Below are positions 1 through 17,302 of a DNA stretch of 64,000 bases, piece after piece. Positions within the stretch are counted from its first letter, which is position 1. Each line of letters starts with the position of its first letter. A program made the position numbers and the translations under genes. The notes under the pieces are model-generated. The model was not told the origin of the DNA and made no database searches. It was given only the letters and a program-made list of their open reading frames with translations. Where the stretch lies: positions 19,344,001 to 19,408,000 of the forward strand of contig NC_088857.1 of assembly GCF_963853765.1 (NCBI RefSeq), given 5' to 3'. This DNA comes from Magallana gigas (Eukaryota).

Positions 1-353
1 AAAATATTTTCATAGTATAGTACTGATAAATTCCAACATTCGATGTCAATTTTAAATAATAAATTGTCTTTGGTACTATCATTTGGAAAGAAGGAAAGAA
101 AAAAGAAACTGATAGCATTCGGTTAACAGAGTCCAAACAAAAACACAAGATGCATATATCTATGCTACGAGGAGATAGTGACTCAAGATTTGGTTTGCTT
201 ACAAGTCAAATCGTCGAAGTCTTCACGGATATAAAACTTTTAAAAAACCCTAAAAATTTGGCAGATCCAAGATTCCAATCAATTACCTTTTGGCAGTTTT
301 TCTTTCAAATTCTCGCGTATTTGTGTTTATAAATCAAGGTGTTCACTTCTTAC

Positions 354-3300
354 CTGTAAAGTGGCATGGAGCTCTCCCACTTGGGGAACACCCTAGCGAT
401 GCTGTCCCTCATCTGAGGGTGGTGGGCCTGGTAGAAGTATGAGTCGTGGGCGAACTTGAGGGCCAGCATGTCCAGGGGGTTCTCCTCCAGTATTGACTCC
501 CAAACCAGGCACGCCTCCGTCATTTCTCTGGAAAATGGCGACAGTGACAAATACAAGTATATCAGCGGACACGGTATGGCAAAATTTGGGTATATTTTTG
601 ATATATGAATGGCTTTATTTTTTAATGTGCATGATGTATCATTATTAATGTTGTTAAATACTTTGGTGTACAGTTTGCATACACCGAATGACTTTCAAAT
701 ATCTACCAACCAAACAAAAAAACCACGGTGCTAAGTGTTTAATGCATATGATCTTTTAAAATAACAAGCTTGATTTCTTTTTAATTGTGTTCATTTATAT
801 TTCTAGATCTTCTAACAAAACATAAAATTAAGTATAAACACAGGTGTTGTTTATAAGCTGAAACACACCCTTGAGCCCACAGTTTGACAGCATTGATGTG
901 CTTTTTCTCGCGTGGGAGGGTGCTAGGACTTTTCTCAAGATCCATCATGGTCTGAACCTCCGCCTGGAAGTCTTTGTCTAAATAGTAACTCCGACCTGTT
1001 CCGAGTGCATCCAAACCGTTCTTGATCACGTGACCCATCACTAATGAAATAAACAATGTATTTAGGAGAAATCCAAAAATTCACGATGTTCATAATTTCT
1101 TCTTGATGACATGTTCTGTATTTGAATATAAAGCAATTTTAATACAATCTAAAATGCTACATCTTATGTTACATTGTAGTGACTCTGACGCCAGTCACTC
1201 GTGAATGGTACGTACCAAAGTTTGGATCGTTGCCAATCATTTTTTCCACGGACTTTTCGAGTCCTCCCAGACTGTCATCATCGTACCATCCCACGTACTG
1301 GAAAATACCATTACAAACTTACTGGTCGAAATCACGATTTGTACCTTTACTATATTCTACCATCGGCATAGTTACAAGAAATTAATATACTAATTTGCAA
1401 TTTCATCCCGATATGCTCTTTGTCTTTTTATTTGCTCAGCTCGATTTTGAAGATTAGCATTTATTCAAAATTGTGTCCCAAAAGATAGGAGCAGTACCTG
1501 TGTCAAAACAGCATCGAATAACTTGGCCGCCTCATTGTTCGTGGTGGACAGTTCAACCCCAAAATCTTTCCAGGCCTGTGATAAAAATACTTTTGTTTTA
1601 ATTATTTAATAATGCAGAAAAGACTAGGTTCCAAAGTTTCGGTACAACGATGCGATTTTTTTATCAGATTTTTAATCGACTTCTATATATTCTTAGGTAA
1701 GTCGACTGTTGAGATGGTCACACGATAGGGCTAGGATTTTCACAATCGATTTTCGATTAATGAAACATATTGTACAAAAAAAAAGGTTATTGTGATGTCA
1801 CGATTCTCACCAGAGAGTCGATAAAAAAATCGGAGGCACTTCAAATTTTCATTCGGCTTTCAGACTTTGCTTTCAACTTTCGACTTAATATAAAACGGTA
1901 CGATTTTAGTAGAAATTAGCGAATAGGATGGAAAATTTGATGCAAAATCTTCGTGTGACCGTACTTTAACACCTTGTACGCCCGTGTTCTTTGCAAACTT
2001 TTAATTTTCACAATATAATTGACTTGTATTACCACAGGTGCTTGTGGACTGGACCGTGCACTCCCCCCCCCTTTTTTCTATATTTTTTTTCAAAATTTTT
2101 TTTTAATTTCTTTTATTAATTATCATTAACAACCCCTTATATATGTCTCCAGCCGAAAAATAAAAGAAATATTACGACTTGGTAGCATTTTATAATCACA
2201 CTCGTTTCCCCTATATATATATATAAAGAGAGAAGGTAAGCAACTCCCGTTTGTTTACATTGAGGTACCACCTGGGAAATTCAAACGATTACTATATCAA
2301 AAATCGGTATACCTTTGGTGTCATCTATTTTTCTCACTTCCACACATATCCTTCTATCTGAAAACTTATATAAATTAGCACGCTGAACCGTAATCTATCC
2401 AATTAATAAACATTTGTCACTCGCGACCACGATATTTTGAAACGTTCCAAGTTGAAGCTACGGAAGTTAGCTGCACAGCGACATCTATGCTAAGATCGAT
2501 AACTCTTCCCGTGTTCCGAATGTCATTGACTTAACGGTAACGCACGAGAGGCCCGAAAAAAAGTTCGAGAAAAGTTTTAGATTAAATGCAAAATTTCAGC
2601 ATTTGAATATCTGCCGTCTTCTATGCCAGCCCACCTATGAAGTGTCTGGGCTTTCAAATCCTGGTAATGTGTTGCTGCAATGCCTGTAGAGCAAACTATT
2701 GATACTTCTTTTTTTTGAGTATACCTAATGTGTTTTGCAATTTTTTTGTTATGTATGTTTTGCCTGTCCCAGCTTGGCCAGTGATGACCAAGTTATGGCC
2801 ATTAATTGCTGCTTGAAAGGTAAACAATTGATCTACATCCATTTTCTTAAATATTGCGCTAAAACTTTTCCCGAACTTTTTTTCGGGCCTCTCGTGCGTT
2901 ACCGTTAAGTCAATGACATTCGGAACACGGGAAGAGTTGCAGCTAACTTCCGTAGCTTCTACTTGGAACGTTTCAAAATATCGTGGCCGCGAGTGACAAA
3001 TTTTTATTAATTGGATAGATTACGGTTCAGCGTGCTAATTTATATAAGTTTTCAGATAGAAGGATATGTGTGGAAGTGAGAAAAATAGATGACACCAAAG
3101 GTATACCGATTTTTGATATAGTAATCGTTTGAATTTCCCAGGTGGTACCTCAATGTAAACAAACGGGAGTTGCTTACCTTCTCTCTTTATATATATATAG
3201 GGGAAACGAGTGTGATTATAAAATGCTACCAAGTCGTGATATTTCTTTTATTTTTCGGCTGGAGACATATATAAGGGGTTGTTAATGATAATTAATAAAA

Positions 3301-3807
3301 GAAATAAAAAAAAAATTTTGAAAAAAAATATAGAAAAAAGGGGGGGGGGGGAGTGCACGGTCCAGTCCACAAGCACCTGTGGTATTACTGGTATTATCGA
3401 TAATGCAAATGGTTTTGAAACATTCAAATTCTAATTCATCTGAGTACATTTACACGATGTTTATCCTGAGAATATTTTTGACTGTCATTCGACAAATCTA
3501 TAAACACTGATGTTCCCCAGCCTAGATTAGAATATCATGTCCCAAACATGCTGCCATACACTCTTAACTGAAAGCAAAATCTTCCAAGGATAAAAACATT
3601 GTTAAATACGTCGTACAAAAGTTAAACATTTACCAATTCATTATTGCAATGCATTTTCATGCAGCTGCACGTTAAATTAGCGTCGTAATACATTTCTGTA
3701 GGGCGTTGAGTTATTACCTTTGTACAGGTAAACAAATTAACAAGTAGTTTTAAGTGGACACCTTCAAAAGCCTAAATTACCTTGCAATCTCTCCAATTAT
3801 TCCTCAT
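354..3807 (-). CDS. TTC38: Tetratricopeptide repeat protein 38, 5' part (continues beyond window start). Coding exons 3781-3807, 1498-1575, 1216-1297, 869-1040, 354-527
   Basis: Exons join in phase with GT-AG to give [78 protein letters not shown]...KLWAQG-EMTEACLVWESILEENPLDMLALKFAHDSYFY, matching the known TTC38 N-terminus. Confidence 0.93.
1633..1968. mobile_element. Degenerate non-autonomous TIR element remnant (Kolobok-like ends)
   Basis: Imperfect inverted ends aaagtttcggtacaacga / tcgtgtgaccgtacttt in TTC38 intron 1. Confidence 0.35.
2033..3381. mobile_element. Foldback-type non-autonomous DNA transposon (Galileo/P-like) with ~525-550-bp TIRs and 7-bp TSD GTATTAC
   Basis: 2033-2580 is the near-perfect reverse complement of 2859-3381 (left arm has an extra ~25 bp). 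Termini CACAGGTG...CACCTGTG. GTATTAC at 2026-2032 and 3382-3388. Confidence 0.9.
2581..2842 (-). pseudogene. Truncated, frameshifted Pif1-family (SF1B) helicase N-terminus inside the foldback element
   Basis: ATG at 2842: MDVDQLFTFQAAINGHNLVITGQAGTGKTYITKKLQNTLGILKK, then a frameshift in an A8 run, then EVSIVCSTGIAATHYQDLKAQTLHRWAGIEDGRYSNAEILHLI. Walker A (GQAGTGKT), motif Ia (STGIAA) and motif Ib (TLHRWAGI) are present. Confidence 0.85.
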
Positions 3808-3860
3808 TGCGTTGCCCTTGCTCATATACAAATAACACCCTCTACCCACTACTTCCCTGG

Positions 3861-4419
3861 ACTGGGTACACTAAATCCTTGGTGATGGAGACAGTTTTGG
3901 TTGAACTTTGACGATGTAAATATTTTTTACTTGGCTAGTCAATACGACAACCCACTCAACCATAAAGTCAGTGGGTTTAAATCTTGCAAAACTATCAGCA
4001 CGCGTTTGGCGTGCAATGCAGAGCTATCCTTTTTACTTTAATTATATTGTACAGTTTCCTAAACTGAATTACAACACTGTTGCAGTTCCATTAAAAGGGC
4101 GTGGTTAAATCTGCCTTCGGACTTTTTTTGGGTTTGACCACGCCCCAAGCAAAATTATCAGCTCATAATTCCTAAATTGATGCATGCACTAGAACAAGTT
4201 TAATGTGCAAGTCGCTCTTTAATCCGATGGCTGCAGATTTAACCGCACCCTTTGTAAACAGTGATGTTCCAAGGTTGAAGAAACTGCACTACACGCCAAA
4301 CGCGAGCGGATCGTTTTGCAAGATTTAAACCCATTTTAAAGTTGAATGTGCTGTCGTGTAAAAAATATTTAGCGTAACCAGAACTGGGTCTAAATATCCC
4401 AGGATTTAGTGTACCCAGT
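3861..4419. mobile_element. MITE with 19-bp TIR containing a nested ~160-bp MITE (4096-4253)
   Basis: Outer TIR actgggtacactaaatcct / aggatttagtgtacccagt; inner aaagggcgtggttaaatctgc / gcagatttaaccgcacccttt. Confidence 0.6.
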
Positions 4420-5676
4420 TCCCAATACAAACTCTATTCGTAGTGTTATTACAGGAAATTTAACACTGAAAAATGTTAATATTATTGATTGCATTGACCG
4501 TTTAAAATTATTTGACTTTCAAAAAAAAAGGGTACATGTTCTTGTGTATATAGTAGAGGATCTTTATTGGGTTTTTTTTTTATAGTAACCAGCCTTGGTA
4601 CAGTAAACGTGAATTGTCACTGGGATTCGCTTCTCCAACGACATAAGAACATTCTCCATCAGCTGCCCCGACCCATAATGTAGATAAAATAATCAATGAC
4701 AAAATAAGCTCCATATGCGACATTTCCATTTAAATCATTTTACAATGGTAAAATAACCCCATCAGCAACACAGCAAAATCACAACATATTGGTACACATG
4801 ATTCTATTTCACTGCTATTCACAGATTGTCAGCTCAATAAAACAAAACACAATTGTAAGAAACGGAAGTTTATTAATAAAAGCAGATTGGTGATTATTAA
4901 CTGAATCCAATAGGCCCTCTCCTCTCTCTTTTTTGGGTTGTAGATGTTTCACATGCTTATTTTCAGAACATAAGTTAGTCAAACACAGCACACATTGTGG
5001 ATTCCACGTTATCTGTAGAAGTCATCATTAAAATCTCCGACTTCTTCACTATGTAGTTTGGAACCATTTTTTTTTCGTGCTGCGCTCTCCATAAAATGTT
5101 ATCAACTAAAACAAGAACTCTAACTTCTTTATGGAAAGATTAACCCCTTCTCGTTTTTTTTACACCGTGAAATGGTTTTAACATTGCAAGTAAAGATGTA
5201 TAAAAGATATAAATTCTATTACAGGTTTTGGATATTAAGTGAAACGAGAAAAGGCTACAGAAACCTTTAACATTTGTACAATTTTTATGAGTTGCTGTTT
5301 TACACAATTGTGTTTTGCAATTTTTTTGGTGCATTTTTGTTTTATAAGGAGCCAGTTAATAATCAAACCATCACTTTTACATTCAACACTGTAAAAAAAT
5401 AACCAGCAAAGTAGAATTTCTCTCAAAATTTAACAAAGATCTTTTGAATTTCACCAATAATGAATTTTTGATATCCAAAAAAATAAACAGCAACAGATAA
5501 TTTAAACCAACCACCATTTAAAAAAGTTTTTCAGTGATGTTCGGCATTTACATTTTAAAAAACAACATTCCAAATAATGACAGATCAAGGTTGGTGCATT
5601 GCGTTGTTGTTGTATGTTAAAGTCTAGAATCATTGACACAGCTCTTGTTGGTTATGAAGCTGTCACGGCTTGTATC

Positions 5677-11129
<5,453 letters not shown>

Positions 11130-11204
11130 TCAAACAATATGGCGTTCACGAATTACGTTCAGTTGCTGGCGACTTGTAGAGGAAATTGTTAATAAAAACC
11201 TACC

Positions 11205-11295
11205 GTTTCAAACCTATTTTTGGTTTTTTCTAAGTTTTTCAGATTTTTTTGTATTTTTAAAGTTGTTTTTTACTTTTTTTGTCCACTTTTTACGT
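11205..11295 (-). promoter_or_regulatory. A-rich 5' UTR tract (PABP autoregulatory-sequence-like)
   Basis: Repeated oligo(A) runs of 5-8 nt separated by short linkers on the minus strand upstream of the PABP ATG, as in known PABP autoregulatory sequences. Confidence 0.7.
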
Positions 11296-11344
11296 GGTGT
11301 GTGATTAAAAAATATAACACACAACACTATCTTATGACCTCGCG

Positions 11345-11393
11345 GTGAGAGAAGAGGGACTCAAAGGAAGTGACGAGAGTAGTGCTCTATATA
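11345..11393 (-). promoter_or_regulatory. Putative pyrimidine-rich (TCT/5'TOP-like) transcription start of PABP
   Basis: Minus strand CTTCCTTTGAGTCCCTCTTCTCTC beginning at 11370; TATATA about 20 nt upstream. A CRE (TGACGTCA, 11584) and an E-box (CACGTG, ~11627) lie further upstream. Confidence 0.45.
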
Positions 11394-11972
11394 TCAAATA
11401 AAAAGAGGAAGTACTTGCGCATTAATATAGTTCTTTTTTATTCAGTTCCTTTTAGAAAAACATTCTCTAAATACATATGTTTATTATAGTATGTATTACT
11501 CAATAAATAAAGTTAAACTTAAAAATGGAACTTTATTCACATAAATATTTCGCAGACTGAAGCAATTTTAAATCACTACACGGTGACGTCAAATGCCGAT
11601 TCATACACCGGGAAATTCAACCGCCACCACGTGGCAAACTACGTGCTCCTGACTTGTAAAATCGATTGATTGAGTTGATTTATTCAATGGATGTAAGATG
11701 GCTTCCGATCAATATAAGATTTTATTTTTTTGAAACTCATTTAAACACTGCCCAAACTGTGCTCTAAAGAGGCAATGTTGTTAATTTATAAGATAGAAAC
11801 TGATTGCAGCGTTGAGTCGATTGTAATGAAATGCAAATTTGCAATATAAAGATCTCAATACCTAATTTACGATTCAGTATTTTGATAGGTGTATTACTAT
11901 AAGAAGAGGTTTGGGGTGCTTCAGCAAAAGTTACGGCAGAAACGCAAAATGTTGTTGGGATTTTTCATTAAT

Positions 11973-12005
<33 letters not shown>

Positions 12006-13276
12006 GAATGATGAAGGTAGATCTAAATACTACAGTGAGGTCGCCTTTAACGAATCACTAAGTAAATTCGCGTTGATGGTACGTTACCAAGCCCGAGTAA
12101 AATTCATAATACAACATTGTTTTATTGTACCATACTTGACTAATAACATCATATATTTCTTTCCCAACAACCAATGATTAAACAAAAATTATCGCTGTAT
12201 TTTGATGAACGGGATCATTTTCTCCATTACCGAATCACGTGATATACAGCTGATTATTTTTTGTTAGGGACAGTGTCGAAATATTTTTTTAAGTTTTAAT
12301 ATGCTTTAAAGCATGAATAAGAAAAATGGAAAGGCTAATTTTTTTTTCATTTTGAATTAAGTGTTCATTCTATTGAAACCGACAATTCATGAAAAAATAA
12401 CAATGAATTCAAAGGTAAAAAAAATGACTGCATGATTTGTAAACTTTGATCATTTAGCTTTTAGTCATTGTAAGTCATCAATATTGTTAAGTTTATGAGA
12501 TACGTGTATATGAACATCTTTTCATGAAATTACAAAGAAATATACAATGTCATGTAAATGGATCGAGAAAAAACCGAAATACGACATGTATGAGGGTTTG
12601 CCCAAAATTGCATAGACAAGTGACGTTATTCAGTTCATAGAACTCACAGAATGATGAAGTTTGTGTCGCAACGGGTTTAAGTTATTTGCATTGAAATTAT
12701 GTGTCGACGTTGATTGTATCAGATTGGGTTTTTATAACATATATGTACTACATCATAAATTTTTAATGCGGCGCAACGACACTTAAAAAAGAAATAAATA
12801 AACATATCGAAACTTGAAGAATATCGTGAAGAAAATAACTCATCGAATAAAAATTTTTTAAAAAAAAAGAAGAAAAAAAATTTATTTAAATTTCTGCATT
12901 TTTTTTTTATTTATTCAAAAAAATTTAGCCATTTTGAATTTTTTAAAGATTTTTTAGCACGTACGTTAGAAAGGTTGAAGTTTGAATATATACACACGGT
13001 AACTAATTATAAAAGAGGTTTTAAAAGATCTAGAAGCATATCCAAGGGCGATTTTAAAGTAAACAAACTAAAATACACAAAATTGCCTAAAAATGTGTTT
13101 AGTGATTGTATAGTTAAGCAACCAAAAACAAAAAAACAAAAAACAAAAACAGGACCGTAATGATGATCGTAGCGGTATCAATTAATTTTGACATAATCCC
13201 TCCATGATCCCCGCATCTCGGTGATTCGTTATTGGAACCCTGACTACCCACAACAATATAGCTAATATAATTATTC

Positions 13277-13641
13277 CAGGCACGTAGCATCAGGGGGGGG
13301 CCAGGGGGGGGGGGGCCTGGCCCCCCCCCCCCCCACTTTTTCTCGCAGCAACAAATCTTTTAAAATTTACATATAGAAAATTGAATTACCATGGAGTTGC
13401 CCCCCCCCCCCCCCCACTTTTTTGGGAGTATGTAAAAAATTGAGTTGAAAATAAGGAAATGAGCATTGAAATTGAAGTTCTATACTACGCCAGCCCCCCC
13501 CCCCCCCCCCCCCCCACGGATTAGAATTTTGACGATTTTGGAAAAGTTTAAATTTCCTTTTTTTTTGGCTTGTCAAGATTTTTTGGATGAGTCTGGCCCC
13601 CCCCCCCCCCCCCCACTTTCAAAAACGATGCTACGTGCCTG
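13277..13641. mobile_element. 365-bp MITE with 15-bp TIR, 5-bp TSD TATTC and internal poly(C)/poly(G) runs
   Basis: caggcacgtagcatc ... gatgctacgtgcctg; TATTC at 13272-13276 and 13642-13646. Confidence 0.85.
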
Positions 13642-14149
13642 TATTCTCTGATTAAGAAAATGTTTGACGCTTTCAGTGCTTGTAGACAGATAATTTTATT
13701 AAACATCTCTACCAAATATGCTTACATACAATGAGCCGTTCACATCAGAGCTCAACCGAAAAGTGAAAGTAGTCAGCTGCACGCATGCTTTTTGTCTGCG
13801 TCTTCAAAAAGCTTGTTCATGTTTGTTTAGAAATTAAGACATAAAACGAGATAAAATTTAATAATTTCATGATAAATTATTAAAACAAGAATAACGCTAC
13901 ATGACAGGATATGTTAAGTTAAGTATTGAACCTTTAATAGAAAAATACAGAATTGTTTATCTGAAAGTGATTCGTTAACGGAAACGATTCGTTAAAGGCA
14001 ACCTCACTGTACTAGGTAGACAAATACGACTGTTTAAATTACTTTGGTCGTTCCACATGTAACCAAGTCCCAAATTATTAAATTAATCCTTAACTAGTAA
14101 ATTTTGCCCAGCTTTGATAATTTTGCTTTTCGTTTTCACAAATACAATA

Positions 14150-14343
14150 TATGACCTGTCATAAGCTGCTTTTAATATACAATTGTCAGTCTGAAATATT
14201 TTAAGCCAGAACTTACACAATCGATATATACGAATGAGATATAAGGGAGAGGGCCCGGCGGTCTAAGTTATGGAACTTGTGTCCAATCCCAATTGTATTT
14301 TTGTACAATAAAAATATGTTCAAATCAAATCAAATCAAATCAG
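14150..14343 (+). mobile_element. 3' end of a non-LTR retrotransposon with a (CAAAT)n tail
   Basis: aataaaaatatgtt followed by (caaat)4. Confidence 0.4.
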
Positions 14344-14760
14344 ATATAAGGGTAGGCGCCCAGTTTCAAAGTATAACAGAGTTGTATTTGTAGTTTTACG
14401 AACACCAAGCACAAAGCGTAAAAACTCAAATTGGACCTTTTCAATATCTTGTCCTTTATGGGAACCCCAAACTTCACATCCATAATTAAAATGCTACACA
14501 CAAAAATATCAAAATTAGAAACCAAAGTACAATGGTTTAAATAAAGCTGATTAATTGTTGATTTGAGAGCAAACATGGCTTTACGACCTTGTGCCGCTAA
14601 TTGTTTTTGAGTGGTAAAAAAATTACCGTTATAATTGAACACAACGCCTAGGTAAACAAACTGGTCCACTATTTCAAAATTTTCACCGTTATATAAAGCC
14701 ATTTCTCGCTGGTGCGGTAATTCCCACCATTTCTAAAAATAACAATTTAGTTTTAGATAC
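14344..14760 (-). mobile_element. Degenerate LINE reverse-transcriptase C-terminal fragment
   Basis: EIVDQFVYLGVVFNYNGNFFTTQKQLAAQGRKAMFALK resembles the post-RT region of non-LTR elements. Confidence 0.75.
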
Positions 14761-14882
14761 TTGTACATCTAGGTTCCATTAATTTGTATAGAACTGTAAA
14801 GTATATCAATAATCTACAGAAGTTCAGATGAATTAATTGCTAAATGTATTTAGTTATTCAAATAGAACGAATGAGTATTAGA

Positions 14883-14888
<6 letters not shown>

Positions 14889-14926
<38 letters not shown>
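14889..14926 (+). repeat. (GA)n microsatellite
   Basis: About 19 GA units. Confidence 0.95.
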
Positions 14927-14931
<5 letters not shown>

Positions 14932-16278
14932 CATTTGCGGATCCAGAGGAGGGGGGGGGGGGGTCCGGGGGTCGGAACCCCTCTTTCTATGGGACTAATG
15001 CATTTTTTTGAAAACTTTGGATGCCTATTTAAAGAAATTTTCTCATTTATGATATAAATACTGTAATTATCTCAAATAAATGCTTTTAAAATAAATTTTT
15101 ATTGCTTATTATAAAGAATTTTGTACAACGTACCGTAATTTTGTTCTTATATGAAAAAAACCCTTTCGATTTTTTTATCGAAATAAAGTACTCCCCTTCA
15201 GCATCCGGTGTTTACTACACCGAATAAACATGTGGACGATAAAATATTTATAACCACATCGACAGTGTATTTTGTACTCTATTTTTTAAAGAAATCGACT
15301 ATAGTTAATAAAGTTATGAACTGACAAGCCATCGAGTAAAACGAAGTTCTAGTAGGAGTGCACGCATTCGTTTTACTTCTAAAATCCGCTTTCAAATGTA
15401 TCTTTTAGTTAATTAACTTAAGTAATTATAATGGATAAGTTTTACTTTGTTTCATACGAAAAATACAAAGAAAAATACCAAGAAAATAACATGACCGCTT
15501 ACGTGGGTTATGCTATTTTTCTGGAATGCTAGCTACCTTCATATATAATAATACCCACATGAAACACAAAAAGCCATTTTTTTGTTTCCAAGAATCGGAA
15601 ATTCTGTTACAAAAATACCGTATAAAAGGGATATATGAAAACCATTATGAAATTAAAATGCACAACTTTTCAAAACTTTCCTAAATATGATCGCATCTGT
15701 ACTACTACCGGATGATGTAACGCATCCATAACAGAAATTCACATCAAGTTTCCTGGGACGACAATTGCTTGTACCATTGTAATACACATGTACCATCTAT
15801 TTAGCAGATAAATTATCCTTATTCTTTTGTCATATCCGATCATTTAGACCTTTATTTAAGAAGGCAATCGATAGAAATCAAAACCGAAAAATAGTTCATA
15901 ATTAAAACATCAAAGACAAATTACCAAAAATCCATTTTTATGGTAGCTTGTAGTAATTAGTCTGAATTATTTTTTGTTTCTTGTCTATTAAGCATAGACG
16001 TACGTACGTTCTCATTGCTGGAGACTGCATTTTTTTAAGGCTAGAAATTATGCAAATCTTCCTCATCTAAACAAAACAGTAAAACGCTCAATAGTGCAGT
16101 GCACTCTGATGTTGGAATTGATGTGAAATAGATAGTGATGAGATAAATGTTTATTAAATTTACGCACGTAAAACGTTCAAAAAGTGCTTGTTTATTGACA
16201 AATAATGAATTTTGCACGTATTGATTTTCATCAATTGGACCCCCCCCTCCCTTTTCCAAATTGCTGGATCCGCCTCTG
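14932..16278. mobile_element. ~1.35-kb non-autonomous TIR element with 5-bp TSD ATTTT
   Basis: Ends catttgcggatccag / ctggatccgcctctg, G- and C-rich subtermini, ATTTT on both flanks. Confidence 0.6.
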
Positions 16279-17302
16279 ATTTTGTGTATGAGTTCATCGT
16301 TATACAACAAATGAATAATTAATTTAAAGTAAATTAATTTTCGCTTAAGTGTGTGCTATGATTAAATCTACATGTAAAAAGGTATGTTCAAAATCTGAAC
16401 TTGTTTGTGCTTTGAAAGTAATTACTCCTTTTTCTGTTTACATTTGTTGGTTGGTGTCATTTAACCACGTTCTAATAAGTAGATATCTATACAATTGCGC
16501 TGTTACAGAGATTTGTATTTTAATTAAATTGATTTTACAAAAAACTGGGGATAGCAATTGTTTATCATCTAAACGGTTACTCGGTTTAAACAGGTATATT
16601 TGTCTCTGGTTTGAATGAAAGTAACCGTTTACGGGCAAACCCGTAATTAATTTCTCTTTAAAAAATAACCAAAATCTGTGTATGTTAATTAAATGATATT
16701 TATTATCAAATCCATTTTTTCAGCCGTTGAAATCTGATCAAGGTGAAATGAAGACTGTCACTCACTCAGGACTAAGATCTAGAGTAATTGTTAATTAATT
16801 AATGAATTTATTGGTAAATCTAGGCTATTGGTCAATTGATGTTAGATATAATGGCAACTTTAATGGCAAGCTTTGCAACTCATTAGATTATACAAATTAA
16901 ACATAGTAAAGTACAGACGTGGGTATTTTACAAGAGACCCTAGTACATACATAAATATGAAAAATGACATAAGTAAAGGGGAAAAACAATGAATAAATAA
17001 TCAGAGGTCTATCATTAAATTGAGAAAGTGTTCAAATTCATTCAGTCATGATTCAAATTAACTACGTTTACATTTGAACTCATTCTTGTAAATTTGTCGC
17101 ATTGTTATCATGATTTAAACCATACACTGTACTTGGGTTCCTTTCAAAATCATACCCATGATTATTGTATGATTTTAACCGATAGATAATTATACATTTT
17201 CTGAATGTTTCGATGAGCTAAAAATCAAATGTTCACAAATATATAGTAATGGATTTTCTTTATCATATACACGTGTTTGCTTTTCAGCCAATCAAAAATA
17301 AG

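What the first reader, a model, noticed from the sequence alone, without database searches (positions are those of the whole stretch)
2581..2842. Pif1 helicase N-terminus is the entire cargo between the foldback arms
Seen: the 278-bp spacer is almost wholly a Pif1-type reading frame. Its ATG is 16 nt from the right arm, it carries Walker A GQAGTGKT, STGIAA and TLHRWAGI, has one frameshift, and is cut off exactly at the left arm. The ORF track misses it. Known: Pif1 domains typify Helitrons and occur in a few other DNA elements. Inference: this is a deletion derivative of a long-TIR element encoding a standalone Pif1 next to its TIR, possibly an undescribed helicase-carrying P/Galileo lineage.
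Basis: partly seen in the sequence, partly recalled or inferred. Interest (0 to 1): 0.78.

Follow-up and report, generated by a model that had tools for sequence, protein, structure and literature searches.

The report
Foldback remnant of helicase-carrying transposon
This is a 1.35-kb non-autonomous "foldback" jumping gene in an oyster genome whose short middle piece is the leftover first 88 codons of a Pif1 helicase gene, marking it as a cut-down descendant of a family of P-type cut-and-paste transposons that carry their own helicase, a pairing I found described in no searched paper.

Summary
Window 2033-3381 is a 1349-bp foldback transposon with 548/523-bp inverted arms and a 7-bp duplication, GTATTAC. 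Its 278-bp spacer holds, on the minus strand, codons 1-88 of a Pif1-family helicase: ATG 16 nt from the right arm, Walker A, one frameshift, and a stop made by the left arm.

The fragment aligns residue 1-88 to residue 1-88 (54-62% identity) with ~1040-1080-aa bivalve Pif1 proteins carrying a C-terminal PHD finger. In Saccostrea, Tegillarca and three metagenome contigs that gene lies convergent with a P-type transposase. In four of these five loci, long inverted repeats enclose both genes. Their termini (CAYAGGTRCTTGWGGAMWGG) match those here; target duplications are 8 bp.

So this is a non-autonomous internal-deletion derivative of a Galileo-like P-superfamily transposon carrying Pif1-PHD. 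It is multi-copy with a conserved spacer. The insertion is polymorphic: empty-site contigs occur in two read sets.

I could not retrieve the autonomous parent from the same species. Only a 19-nt read overhang continues the reading frame.

This scan had already noted the parent family (s1-356060, s1-399269, s1-388586) and sister foldback copies (s1-403218, s1-380978) on other DNA of this genome. No searched paper pairs Pif1 with P transposons.

The parts
2026..2032 (.). Left copy of the 7-bp target-site duplication, GTATTAC
   Evidence: The same heptamer sits at 3382-3388. An empty-site contig in X1 joins 2026 to 3383 and keeps a single copy.
2033..2580 (+). Left terminal inverted repeat (548 bp). 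The terminus reads CACAGGTGCTTGTGGACTGG and is followed by a poly-C run. In the inferred parent this is the transposase-side end.
   Evidence: Inverted repeats. The terminus has exactly two matches in the window. Terminal motif shared with elements of Saccostrea, Tegillarca, Mytilus and L008. Loose ends with many different flanks at 2032/2033.
2476..2501 (.). 26-bp segment present in the left arm but missing from the right arm: a private deletion in this copy's right arm
   Evidence: Alignment. Copy L003 has the segment in both arms.
2581..2858 (.). 278-bp spacer: 16 nt of upstream leader plus the first 88 codons of the Pif1 gene
   Evidence: One contig (X3 record 20, 2551-2888) spans both arm/spacer junctions at about 9 times the flank depth.
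2580..2842 (-). Remnant Pif1 reading frame, codons 1-88. It carries Walker A (GQAGTGKT), STGIAA and TLHRWAGI. It breaks at the deletion junction, and the stop TAA at 2579-2577 is supplied by the arm.
   Evidence: Translations. Hits starting at residue 1. Pairwise match. End-to-end alignment.
2709..2716 (-). Homopolymer run (8 A on the coding strand) holding the 1-nt frameshift of this copy
   Evidence: An extra base here in 35.9 of 42.2 depth in X1 and in 4 of 8 RNA reads in X21, but 93 of 694 in X2 and none in X3.
2859..3381 (-). Right terminal inverted repeat (523 bp), the helicase-side end. It presumably holds the Pif1 promoter, because the ATG lies 16 nt inside it.
   Evidence: Loose ends with many different flanks at 3381.
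3382..3388 (.). Right copy of the target-site duplication, GTATTAC

Best explanation
Window 2033-3381 is a non-autonomous deletion derivative of a two-gene cut-and-paste transposon of the P superfamily with Galileo-like long TIRs.

The autonomous form, as seen in other bivalves, is about 7-10 kb. Its layout is: long TIR, then a Pif1 helicase gene with a PHD finger reading inward, then a P-type transposase gene reading inward from the other side, then the second long TIR.

Here one internal deletion removed everything from Pif1 codon 89 to the inner edge of the opposite TIR. This step is inferred. It most likely arose by interrupted template-dependent gap repair after an excision, as is established for internally deleted Drosophila P elements. 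What remains is both TIRs, the 16-nt leader and 88 codons.

The product then multiplied as a family and is moved in trans by a transposase that recognises these TIRs. This is also inferred. The helicase fragment is a fossil of the deletion, not functional cargo: it has only the P-loop and motif Ia region. The insertion at this locus is recent and still segregating.
For: Shown here:

- Anatomy, TIRs and the 7-bp duplication.
- The fragment aligns 1-88 to 1-88 with Pif1-PHD proteins of Mytilus, Saccostrea and metagenome relatives at 54-62% identity. These proteins have the PIF1 domain from residue ~3 and a PHD finger at the C-terminus.
- Complete relatives:
  - Saccostrea echinata L004:1951-9198, 7248 bp. 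TIRs 521/526 bp, 8-bp duplication TAATAGAC. Pif1-PHD and a 787-aa transposase, each matched by one uninterrupted alignment.
  - Tegillarca granosa L002:9461-16976.
  - L005, a 7066-bp contig with TIR ends, a 1056-aa Pif1 and a 798-aa transposase.
  - L006, with the same gene order.
  - L008, with an 8-bp duplication GTTACAGT.
- Termini are conserved across these species.
- The transposase is P-type: PF21787 above Pfam's cut-off. PF21788 (GTP-binding insertion domain) is found in the 64%-identical P0172. Sources name members 'Transposable element P transposase-like'.
- ATG-to-TIR distance is 16 nt here, against 14 nt (L005), 53 nt (L004) and 121 nt (L002).
- In read set X2, a contig leaves the spacer at 2581 with 19 other letters. 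These continue the frame as N-H-D-E-R-F, matching the family's conserved T-D-E-R-F/Y at exactly that position.
- The family is multi-copy with identical junctions (X3 record 20, X1 record 5, L003).
- Empty-site contigs are present in X1 and X3, while X2 has contigs across both filled junctions.
- The duplication GTATTAC equals the Galileo target consensus (PMC4168063).
Against: - No autonomous copy with near-identical TIRs from the same species was retrieved. Two metagenome DNA scans were blank. None of the fetched Pif1 or transposase loci matched the arms beyond short islands. The same-species parent therefore rests on a 19-nt overhang and on unverified notes of this scan.
- The left breakpoint coincides with the inner end of the arm. 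This is expected if the cut fell within the last few bases of the left TIR, but a fold-back copying event would give the same result.
- No THAP domain was detected by Pfam in the relatives' transposases.
- Depth from contig k-mers is not a copy number.
Confidence: 0.85

Rival explanations
1. Same parent family, different origin. The foldback arose by one-ended palindrome formation: a strand switch or hairpin copying of the helicase-side TIR after 278 bp of interior. On this reading the left arm is a copy of the right arm, not the original transposase-side TIR.
For: The Pif1 fragment ends exactly where arm homology begins, and no unique transposase-side sequence survives. Long-TIR elements such as Galileo show very dynamic TIRs (PMC4168063).
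Against: In intact relatives the two TIRs are already 98-99% identical. A simple deletion ending within the left TIR's last bases therefore gives the same picture, and nothing in the sequence requires a fold-back step.
Confidence: 0.1
2. The Pif1 piece is a chance capture of a fragment of a host gene or a Helitron by an unrelated foldback element.
For: Pif1 domains are common in Helitrons, and DNA transposons do pick up gene fragments (general knowledge).
Against: - The fragment starts at residue 1 of the transposon-borne protein, with the ATG placed beside the TIR as in autonomous relatives.
- Host-type PIF1 matches at only 34-38%.
- The termini are homologous to those of the Pif1-carrying elements.
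- The spacer is identical in other copies.
- There is a target-site duplication and TIRs, which Helitrons lack.
Confidence: 0.03
3. The palindrome is an assembly artefact of this genome build.
For: Long inverted repeats are prone to misassembly.
Against: - Independent contigs from three DNA read sets cover the arm/spacer junctions and the flank junctions.
- An ENA metagenome contig (L003) carries the same structure.
- A clean empty-site allele exists.
Confidence: 0.01

Closest known systems
Galileo (Drosophila; P superfamily), including its two-TIR non-autonomous copies
   Same: - Very long TIRs that give a foldback shape.
- 7-bp (sometimes 8-bp) target duplication with consensus GTANTAC, or GTATTAC in D. 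willistoni (PMC4168063). The duplication here has exactly that sequence.
- Many copies consist of two TIRs plus a short spacer.
- The autonomous form encodes a P-type transposase.
   Different: - Galileo encodes a transposase only and is known from drosophilids.
- The relatives here carry a second conserved gene (Pif1 helicase with PHD finger) and occur in bivalves.
- No THAP domain was detected in their transposases by Pfam.
- The arms here have no internal tandem repeats beyond low-complexity T/A runs.
- Relationship to Galileo by transposase phylogeny was not tested.
Internally deleted P elements and P-derived MITEs (KP-type deletions; BuT5, PMC3698922)
   Same: - Non-autonomous derivatives made by internal deletion that keep both ends and move in trans.
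- Still smaller derivatives of this family are visible as read joints, for example 2214 to 3192, seen in two read sets.
   Different: - P element TIRs are short (31 bp, from general knowledge).
- KP keeps the transposase N-terminus and acts as a repressor. Here the surviving coding piece belongs to the helicase and has no evident activity.
Helitron / Helentron RepHel
   Same: A Pif1-family (SF1B) helicase encoded by a DNA transposon.
   Different: - In Helitrons the helicase is fused behind a Rep/HUH nuclease, and the elements have neither TIRs nor target duplications.
- Here the helicase starts at residue 1, ends in a PHD finger, and sits beside a DDE-type P transposase between TIRs with 7-8-bp duplications.
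Drosophila FB and other MULE-type foldback elements (e.g. Tm1, PMC3169594)
   Same: Foldback architecture with a short loop.
   Different: - FB-type arms are built of tandem repeats and give 9-bp duplications (general knowledge). Their transposases belong to the Mutator superfamily.
- Here the duplication is 7 bp and the linked transposase in relatives is P-type.

Membership tests
P superfamily of cut-and-paste transposons (for the lineage this element derives from) | Transposase with the P/THAP9-type RNase H-like catalytic domain | tested here: met
   PF21787 above the gathering score in transposases lying between homologous TIRs: L002 at E 1.6e-14, L005 at 1.7e-12, L004 at 1.8e-12. The window element itself encodes no transposase.
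P superfamily of cut-and-paste transposons (for the lineage this element derives from) | GTP-binding insertion domain inside the catalytic domain | tested here: met
   PF21788 above the cut-off in P0172 (64% identical to the Saccostrea transposase), P0218 and P0221. It was not detected in L004 or L005 themselves.
P superfamily of cut-and-paste transposons (for the lineage this element derives from) | N-terminal THAP zinc-finger DNA-binding domain | tested here: not met
   No THAP hit in the L004 or L005 transposases, even at E up to 10. The only other P-related signal is a weak PF12017 HTH hit (E 0.02) in L004. This was a Pfam scan only; a divergent THAP cannot be excluded.
P superfamily of cut-and-paste transposons (for the lineage this element derives from) | 7-8-bp target-site duplication and TIRs | tested here: met
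   7 bp here, confirmed by the empty-site contig. 8 bp in L004 and L008. No duplication is recognisable in L002.
Galileo-like branch | TIRs of hundreds of bp and a GTANTAC target preference | tested here: met
   Arms are 548/523 bp. The duplication GTATTAC equals the published consensus. Reads from other copies keep GT.. or ..TAC beside the termini (loose ends at 3383, 3385 and 2029). The Saccostrea and L008 duplications do not fit GTANTAC.
Galileo-like branch | Transposase groups with Galileo in a phylogeny | not tested
Non-autonomous deletion derivative | Interior collinear with one end of the autonomous element, and no transposase | tested here: met
   The leader plus codons 1-88 sit beside the TIR, as in L004, L005 and L002. 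No transposase similarity anywhere in the window.
Non-autonomous deletion derivative | An autonomous element with the same TIRs in the same genome | tested here: inconclusive
   The only direct sign is a 19-nt overhang in X2 that continues the frame. Metagenome scans and 12 contig look-ups did not return it. Earlier notes of the scan report such elements, but I could not compare their TIRs.
Helitron | Rep/HUH domain fused before the helicase; no TIRs and no target duplication | tested here: not met
   The helicase starts at residue 1 in all close relatives. TIRs and a target duplication are present.
Functional Pif1 helicase | Full set of SF1B motifs (Walker B to motif VI) and the 2B domain | tested here: not met
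   Only residues 1-88 remain (Walker A and motif Ia region). On the pieces, Pfam PIF1 scores only E 5e-4 on the first piece and nothing on the second.

The most novel reading that the evidence does not exclude
The foldback may be the visible tip of an undescribed, widespread branch of the P superfamily, found in bivalves and possibly beyond. In this branch transposition would be a two-protein process. The self-encoded Pif1-PHD helicase would be needed either to open the long hairpin-prone TIRs or to drive template-dependent repair that re-copies the element into the emptied donor site. The foldback derivatives keep the inward-facing promoter regions of both TIRs. They would then make hairpin or double-stranded RNA that feeds back on the family; the RNA reads show transcripts from both strands and a strong A-to-G excess.
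Probability: 0.25. Interest if true: 0.8.

Novelty: new variant of a known kind. Interest (0 to 1): 0.6.

Why it matters
Cut-and-paste transposons are normally thought to bring only a transposase and to borrow host repair enzymes. Among eukaryotic DNA transposons, helicases are the hallmark of rolling-circle Helitrons.

Here, in several bivalve families, a Pif1 helicase with a chromatin-reading PHD finger sits between the TIRs beside a P-type transposase. In two of the five loci both genes read as single uninterrupted frames. That argues the helicase is part of the transposition or repair cycle.

Pif1 is known to drive recombination-coupled DNA synthesis. P elements are known to be restored at the donor site by such synthesis. 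The pairing therefore offers a direct, testable link between a transposon-encoded helicase and copy-number gain.

The oyster foldback is young, multi-copy and still polymorphic. It is a natural substrate for such tests and a marker of recent activity of the family in a farmed species.

Tried and rejected
1. Pfam on the two raw pieces was almost uninformative. PIF1 scored E 5e-4 among many P-loop families for the first piece, and nothing was found for the second. The identification rests on full-library phmmer and pairwise alignments.
2. Same-species parent, none matched the arms:
   - two exact-pattern scans of metagenome contigs (the breakpoint-spanning form, then a spacer 28-mer) found nothing;
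   - a by-sequence search of earlier findings was blank;
3. P0049, an 86-aa protein ending at nearly the same residue, looked like a second foldback. It is a frameshifted longer Pif1 pseudogene on a 1.2-kb contig.
4. An AlphaFold model of the L005 transposase from a 3-sequence alignment was unusable (mean pLDDT 33.5). No fold search was run on it.
5. Sequence and profile searches of the PDB with the transposase found nothing meaningful.
6. Literature: six full-text searches found no paper that links Pif1 with P-superfamily or Galileo elements. The one paper naming both PIF1 and THAP9 lists them only as unrelated candidate genes. Repbase and Dfam could not be searched.
7. An 8-bp duplication for this copy was rejected: the empty-site contig retains exactly 7 shared bases.

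Full report
**1. What is in the sequence**

The stretch 2033-3381 is a 1349-bp palindromic element.
- Its arms, 2033-2580 and 2859-3381, align over their whole length. They are about 99% identical apart from homopolymer length differences and one 26-bp segment (about 2476-2501) that the right arm lacks.
- The 32-nt terminus occurs exactly twice in the 64-kb window, once at each end in inverted orientation.
- The element is flanked by GTATTAC on both sides, at 2026-2032 and 3382-3388.
- Folded as a single strand it gives one long hairpin with the spacer as its loop.
- It lies between exons of a TTC38-like gene (minus strand, about 350-1575) and the 3' end of a poly(A)-binding-protein gene (about 5914-6147).

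**2. The spacer**

The spacer is 2581-2858, 278 bp.
- On the minus strand an ATG at 2842 opens a 48-codon frame containing GQAGTGKT (window:2699-2842:-).
- After a 1-nt shift in the run of eight A (2709-2716), the frame window:2580-2714:- continues with STGIAA and TLHRWAGI.
- The last sense codon straddles the spacer/arm border, and the stop TAA (2579-2577) belongs to the arm.

**3. What the fragment is**

- A phmmer search of the 48-aa piece against 1.84 billion representatives returned the identical 48-aa ORF. It also returned long proteins whose residues 1-46 align with residues 1-46 of the query: P0004 (756 aa, Tegillarca granosa) and P0005 (986 aa, Mytilus galloprovincialis).
- The second piece matches residues 44-88 of P0005 at 73% identity.
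- Read through with X at the break, the 88 residues align end to end (1-88 to 1-88) at 54-62% identity with a set of bivalve and metagenome proteins. Canonical PIF1 proteins of animals match at only 34-38%, at their residues ~197-286.
- The close relatives are about 1040-1080 aa. They have the PIF1 helicase domain from residue ~3, the Pif1 2B domain, and a C-terminal PHD finger.

**4. Genomic context of the relatives**

| Locus | Source | Element | TIRs | Target duplication | Pif1-PHD | Transposase |
|---|---|---|---|---|---|---|
| L004 | Saccostrea echinata | 1951-9198 (7248 bp) | 521/526 bp, 99% identical | TAATAGAC (8 bp) | from 2525, one uninterrupted alignment | 787 aa, uninterrupted, opposite strand |
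| L002 | Tegillarca granosa | 9461-16976 | about 420 bp | none recognisable | frameshifted | P-type |
| L005 | JGI metagenome contig, 7066 bp | contig begins and ends in inverted repeats | at least 179 bp (cut by the contig ends) | not seen | 1056 aa | 798 aa, convergent |
| L006 | Hydrothermal-vent metagenome | partial | not found | not seen | same gene order | same gene order |
| L008 | ENA contig | 9139-19261 | termini present at both ends | GTTACAGT (8 bp) | present | present |

- The transposases hit PF21787 (TNP-like RNase H N-terminal domain) at E 1e-12 to 1e-14.
- Close homologues such as P0172 also hit PF21788, the GTP-binding insertion domain peculiar to P transposases.
- UniRef names several members 'Transposable element P transposase-like'.
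- No THAP domain was found.

**5. The ends are homologous**

- The first 20 nt of the oyster arm are 19/20 identical in Tegillarca, 17/20 in Saccostrea and Mytilus, and 16/20 in L008. The consensus is CAYAGGTRCTTGWGGAMWGG. A poly-C run follows in Crassostrea, Saccostrea and Mytilus.
- The ATG lies 16 nt inside the arm here, against 14 nt in L005, 53 nt in L004 and 121 nt in L002.

The spacer is thus exactly the part of an autonomous element that adjoins its helicase-side TIR.

**6. Family, copy number and mobility (contigs and reads of four public runs)**

- Unique flanks have a depth of about 4.5-18. The spacer and both of its junctions sit on single contigs at about 8-9 times the flank depth in X1 and X3 (X3 record 20 spans 2551-2888; X1 record 5 spans 2581-2857). 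The outer parts of the arms are far deeper still. Such depths are not copy numbers, but they show a multi-copy family with a constant spacer.
- An independent ENA contig (L003) is a second copy: 98% identical, with the same junctions and with the 26-bp segment in both arms.
- Loose ends with many different sequences begin exactly at 2032/2033 and 3381, which fixes the termini.
- Joints such as 2214 to 3192, seen in two runs, reveal still smaller derivatives.
- X1 holds a 596-nt contig that joins 2026 to 3383 with one copy of the heptamer. X3 holds a similar empty allele. X2 has contigs across both filled junctions. The insertion is therefore polymorphic and recent, and the duplication is 7 bp.
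- In X1, 35.9 of 42.2 depth carries one extra base in the A-run, as do 4 of 8 RNA reads in X21. The extra base is rare in X2 (93 of 694) and absent from X3. The frameshift is therefore not shared by all copies.

**7. Sign of a longer copy in oysters**

One X2 contig leaves the spacer at 2581 with 19 letters that are not arm sequence. Read on the coding strand, they continue the frame as N-H-D-E-R-F. The family reads K/R/Q-T-D-E-R-F/Y at precisely that position.

This is the only direct evidence I obtained for a same-species element in which the gene runs on. Exact-pattern scans of metagenome contigs and all further contig look-ups failed to return it.

**8. Interpretation**

The element is an internal-deletion, non-autonomous derivative of a P-superfamily transposon with Galileo-like long TIRs and a second gene, Pif1-PHD.
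- The deletion runs from codon 89 to the inner end of the opposite TIR. That the break coincides with the arm border needs no special mechanism if it fell in the last bases of that TIR. A fold-back copying origin cannot be excluded.
- The 88-codon remnant lacks every helicase motif after Ia and is best read as a fossil.
- Movement must depend on a transposase supplied in trans.
- The duplication GTATTAC is identical to the published target consensus of Galileo in D. willistoni, where duplications are 7 or occasionally 8 bp (PMC4168063).

**9. Novelty**

Six full-text searches found no paper that joins Pif1 to P-type or Galileo elements. Curated repeat libraries could not be consulted.

Earlier notes of this scan describe the two-gene P/Pif1-PHD family and two sister foldback copies elsewhere in this genome. 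They gave me the lead and the host's name (oyster). I verified the architecture independently in other species but could not compare their sequences.

The foldback itself is an ordinary kind of object. The lineage it points to is an unusual variant of a known superfamily.

**10. Limits**

- The species label comes from earlier notes and from run labels, not from my own test.
- Depth ratios come from assembled contigs.
- The A-to-G excess in RNA comes from a different animal than the DNA runs.

Noticed in passing
window 2033-3381 (RNA run X21): PolyA RNA reads cover the element on both strands. They show 32 A>G places out of about 57 changes, against 4-8 in the DNA runs. The changes cluster in reads with several differences each; at 2901 and 2908, for example, all 10 RNA reads show G and none of the DNA contigs do. 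This looks like ADAR hyper-editing of the hairpin transcript, but the RNA comes from another animal, so copy variants are not excluded.
   Followed up: partly
window 2598-2817: Three RNA reads join 2817 back to 2598 ('goes back 220'). This suggests either a copy with a duplicated spacer or a circular or back-spliced RNA.
   Followed up: no
window 2053-3340 (joints): DNA contigs join 2214 to 3192 (in two runs), 2053 to 3192 and 2177 to 3340. These are shorter MITE-like derivatives that keep only the outer 20-180 bp of each arm. The outer arm parts are roughly ten times deeper than the spacer.
   Followed up: partly
window 3861-4419: A second, unrelated imperfect palindrome lies 470 bp to the right. 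It has nested inverted repeats: 3861-3892/4388-4419, 3972-4021/4284-4333 and 4094-4114/4233-4253. It is probably another MITE or foldback element.
   Followed up: no
window 1743-1904: A short stretch left of the element is also repetitive, with depth 34-249 against about 5-18 in the flanks. It has a recurrent 99-bp skip (1759 to 1859) in all three DNA runs.
   Followed up: no
window 350-1575 and 5914-6147, minus strand: Host exons. The first set is a TTC38-like tetratricopeptide protein. The second is the MLLE-containing C-terminus of a poly(A)-binding protein. The foldback sits between them, upstream of or within the first intron of the TTC38-like gene.
   Followed up: no
L004:1951-16672 (Saccostrea echinata): The whole 7.25-kb element plus 227 bp of right flank is present twice in tandem (period about 7475 bp), with identical right flanks. 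This is either a segmental duplication or an assembly duplication.
   Followed up: no
L002:20381-21448 (Tegillarca granosa): About 3.4 kb beyond the element lies a gene for a YqaJ/viral alkaline-exonuclease domain protein with a weak PHD hit. It may belong to another mobile element.
   Followed up: no
L002:10001-13110: The Tegillarca Pif1 gene is broken into consecutive overlapping ORFs. One break lies in the same lysine-rich A-run region as the oyster frameshift. The annotated 756-aa protein P0004 skips residues 47 onward for that reason.
   Followed up: partly
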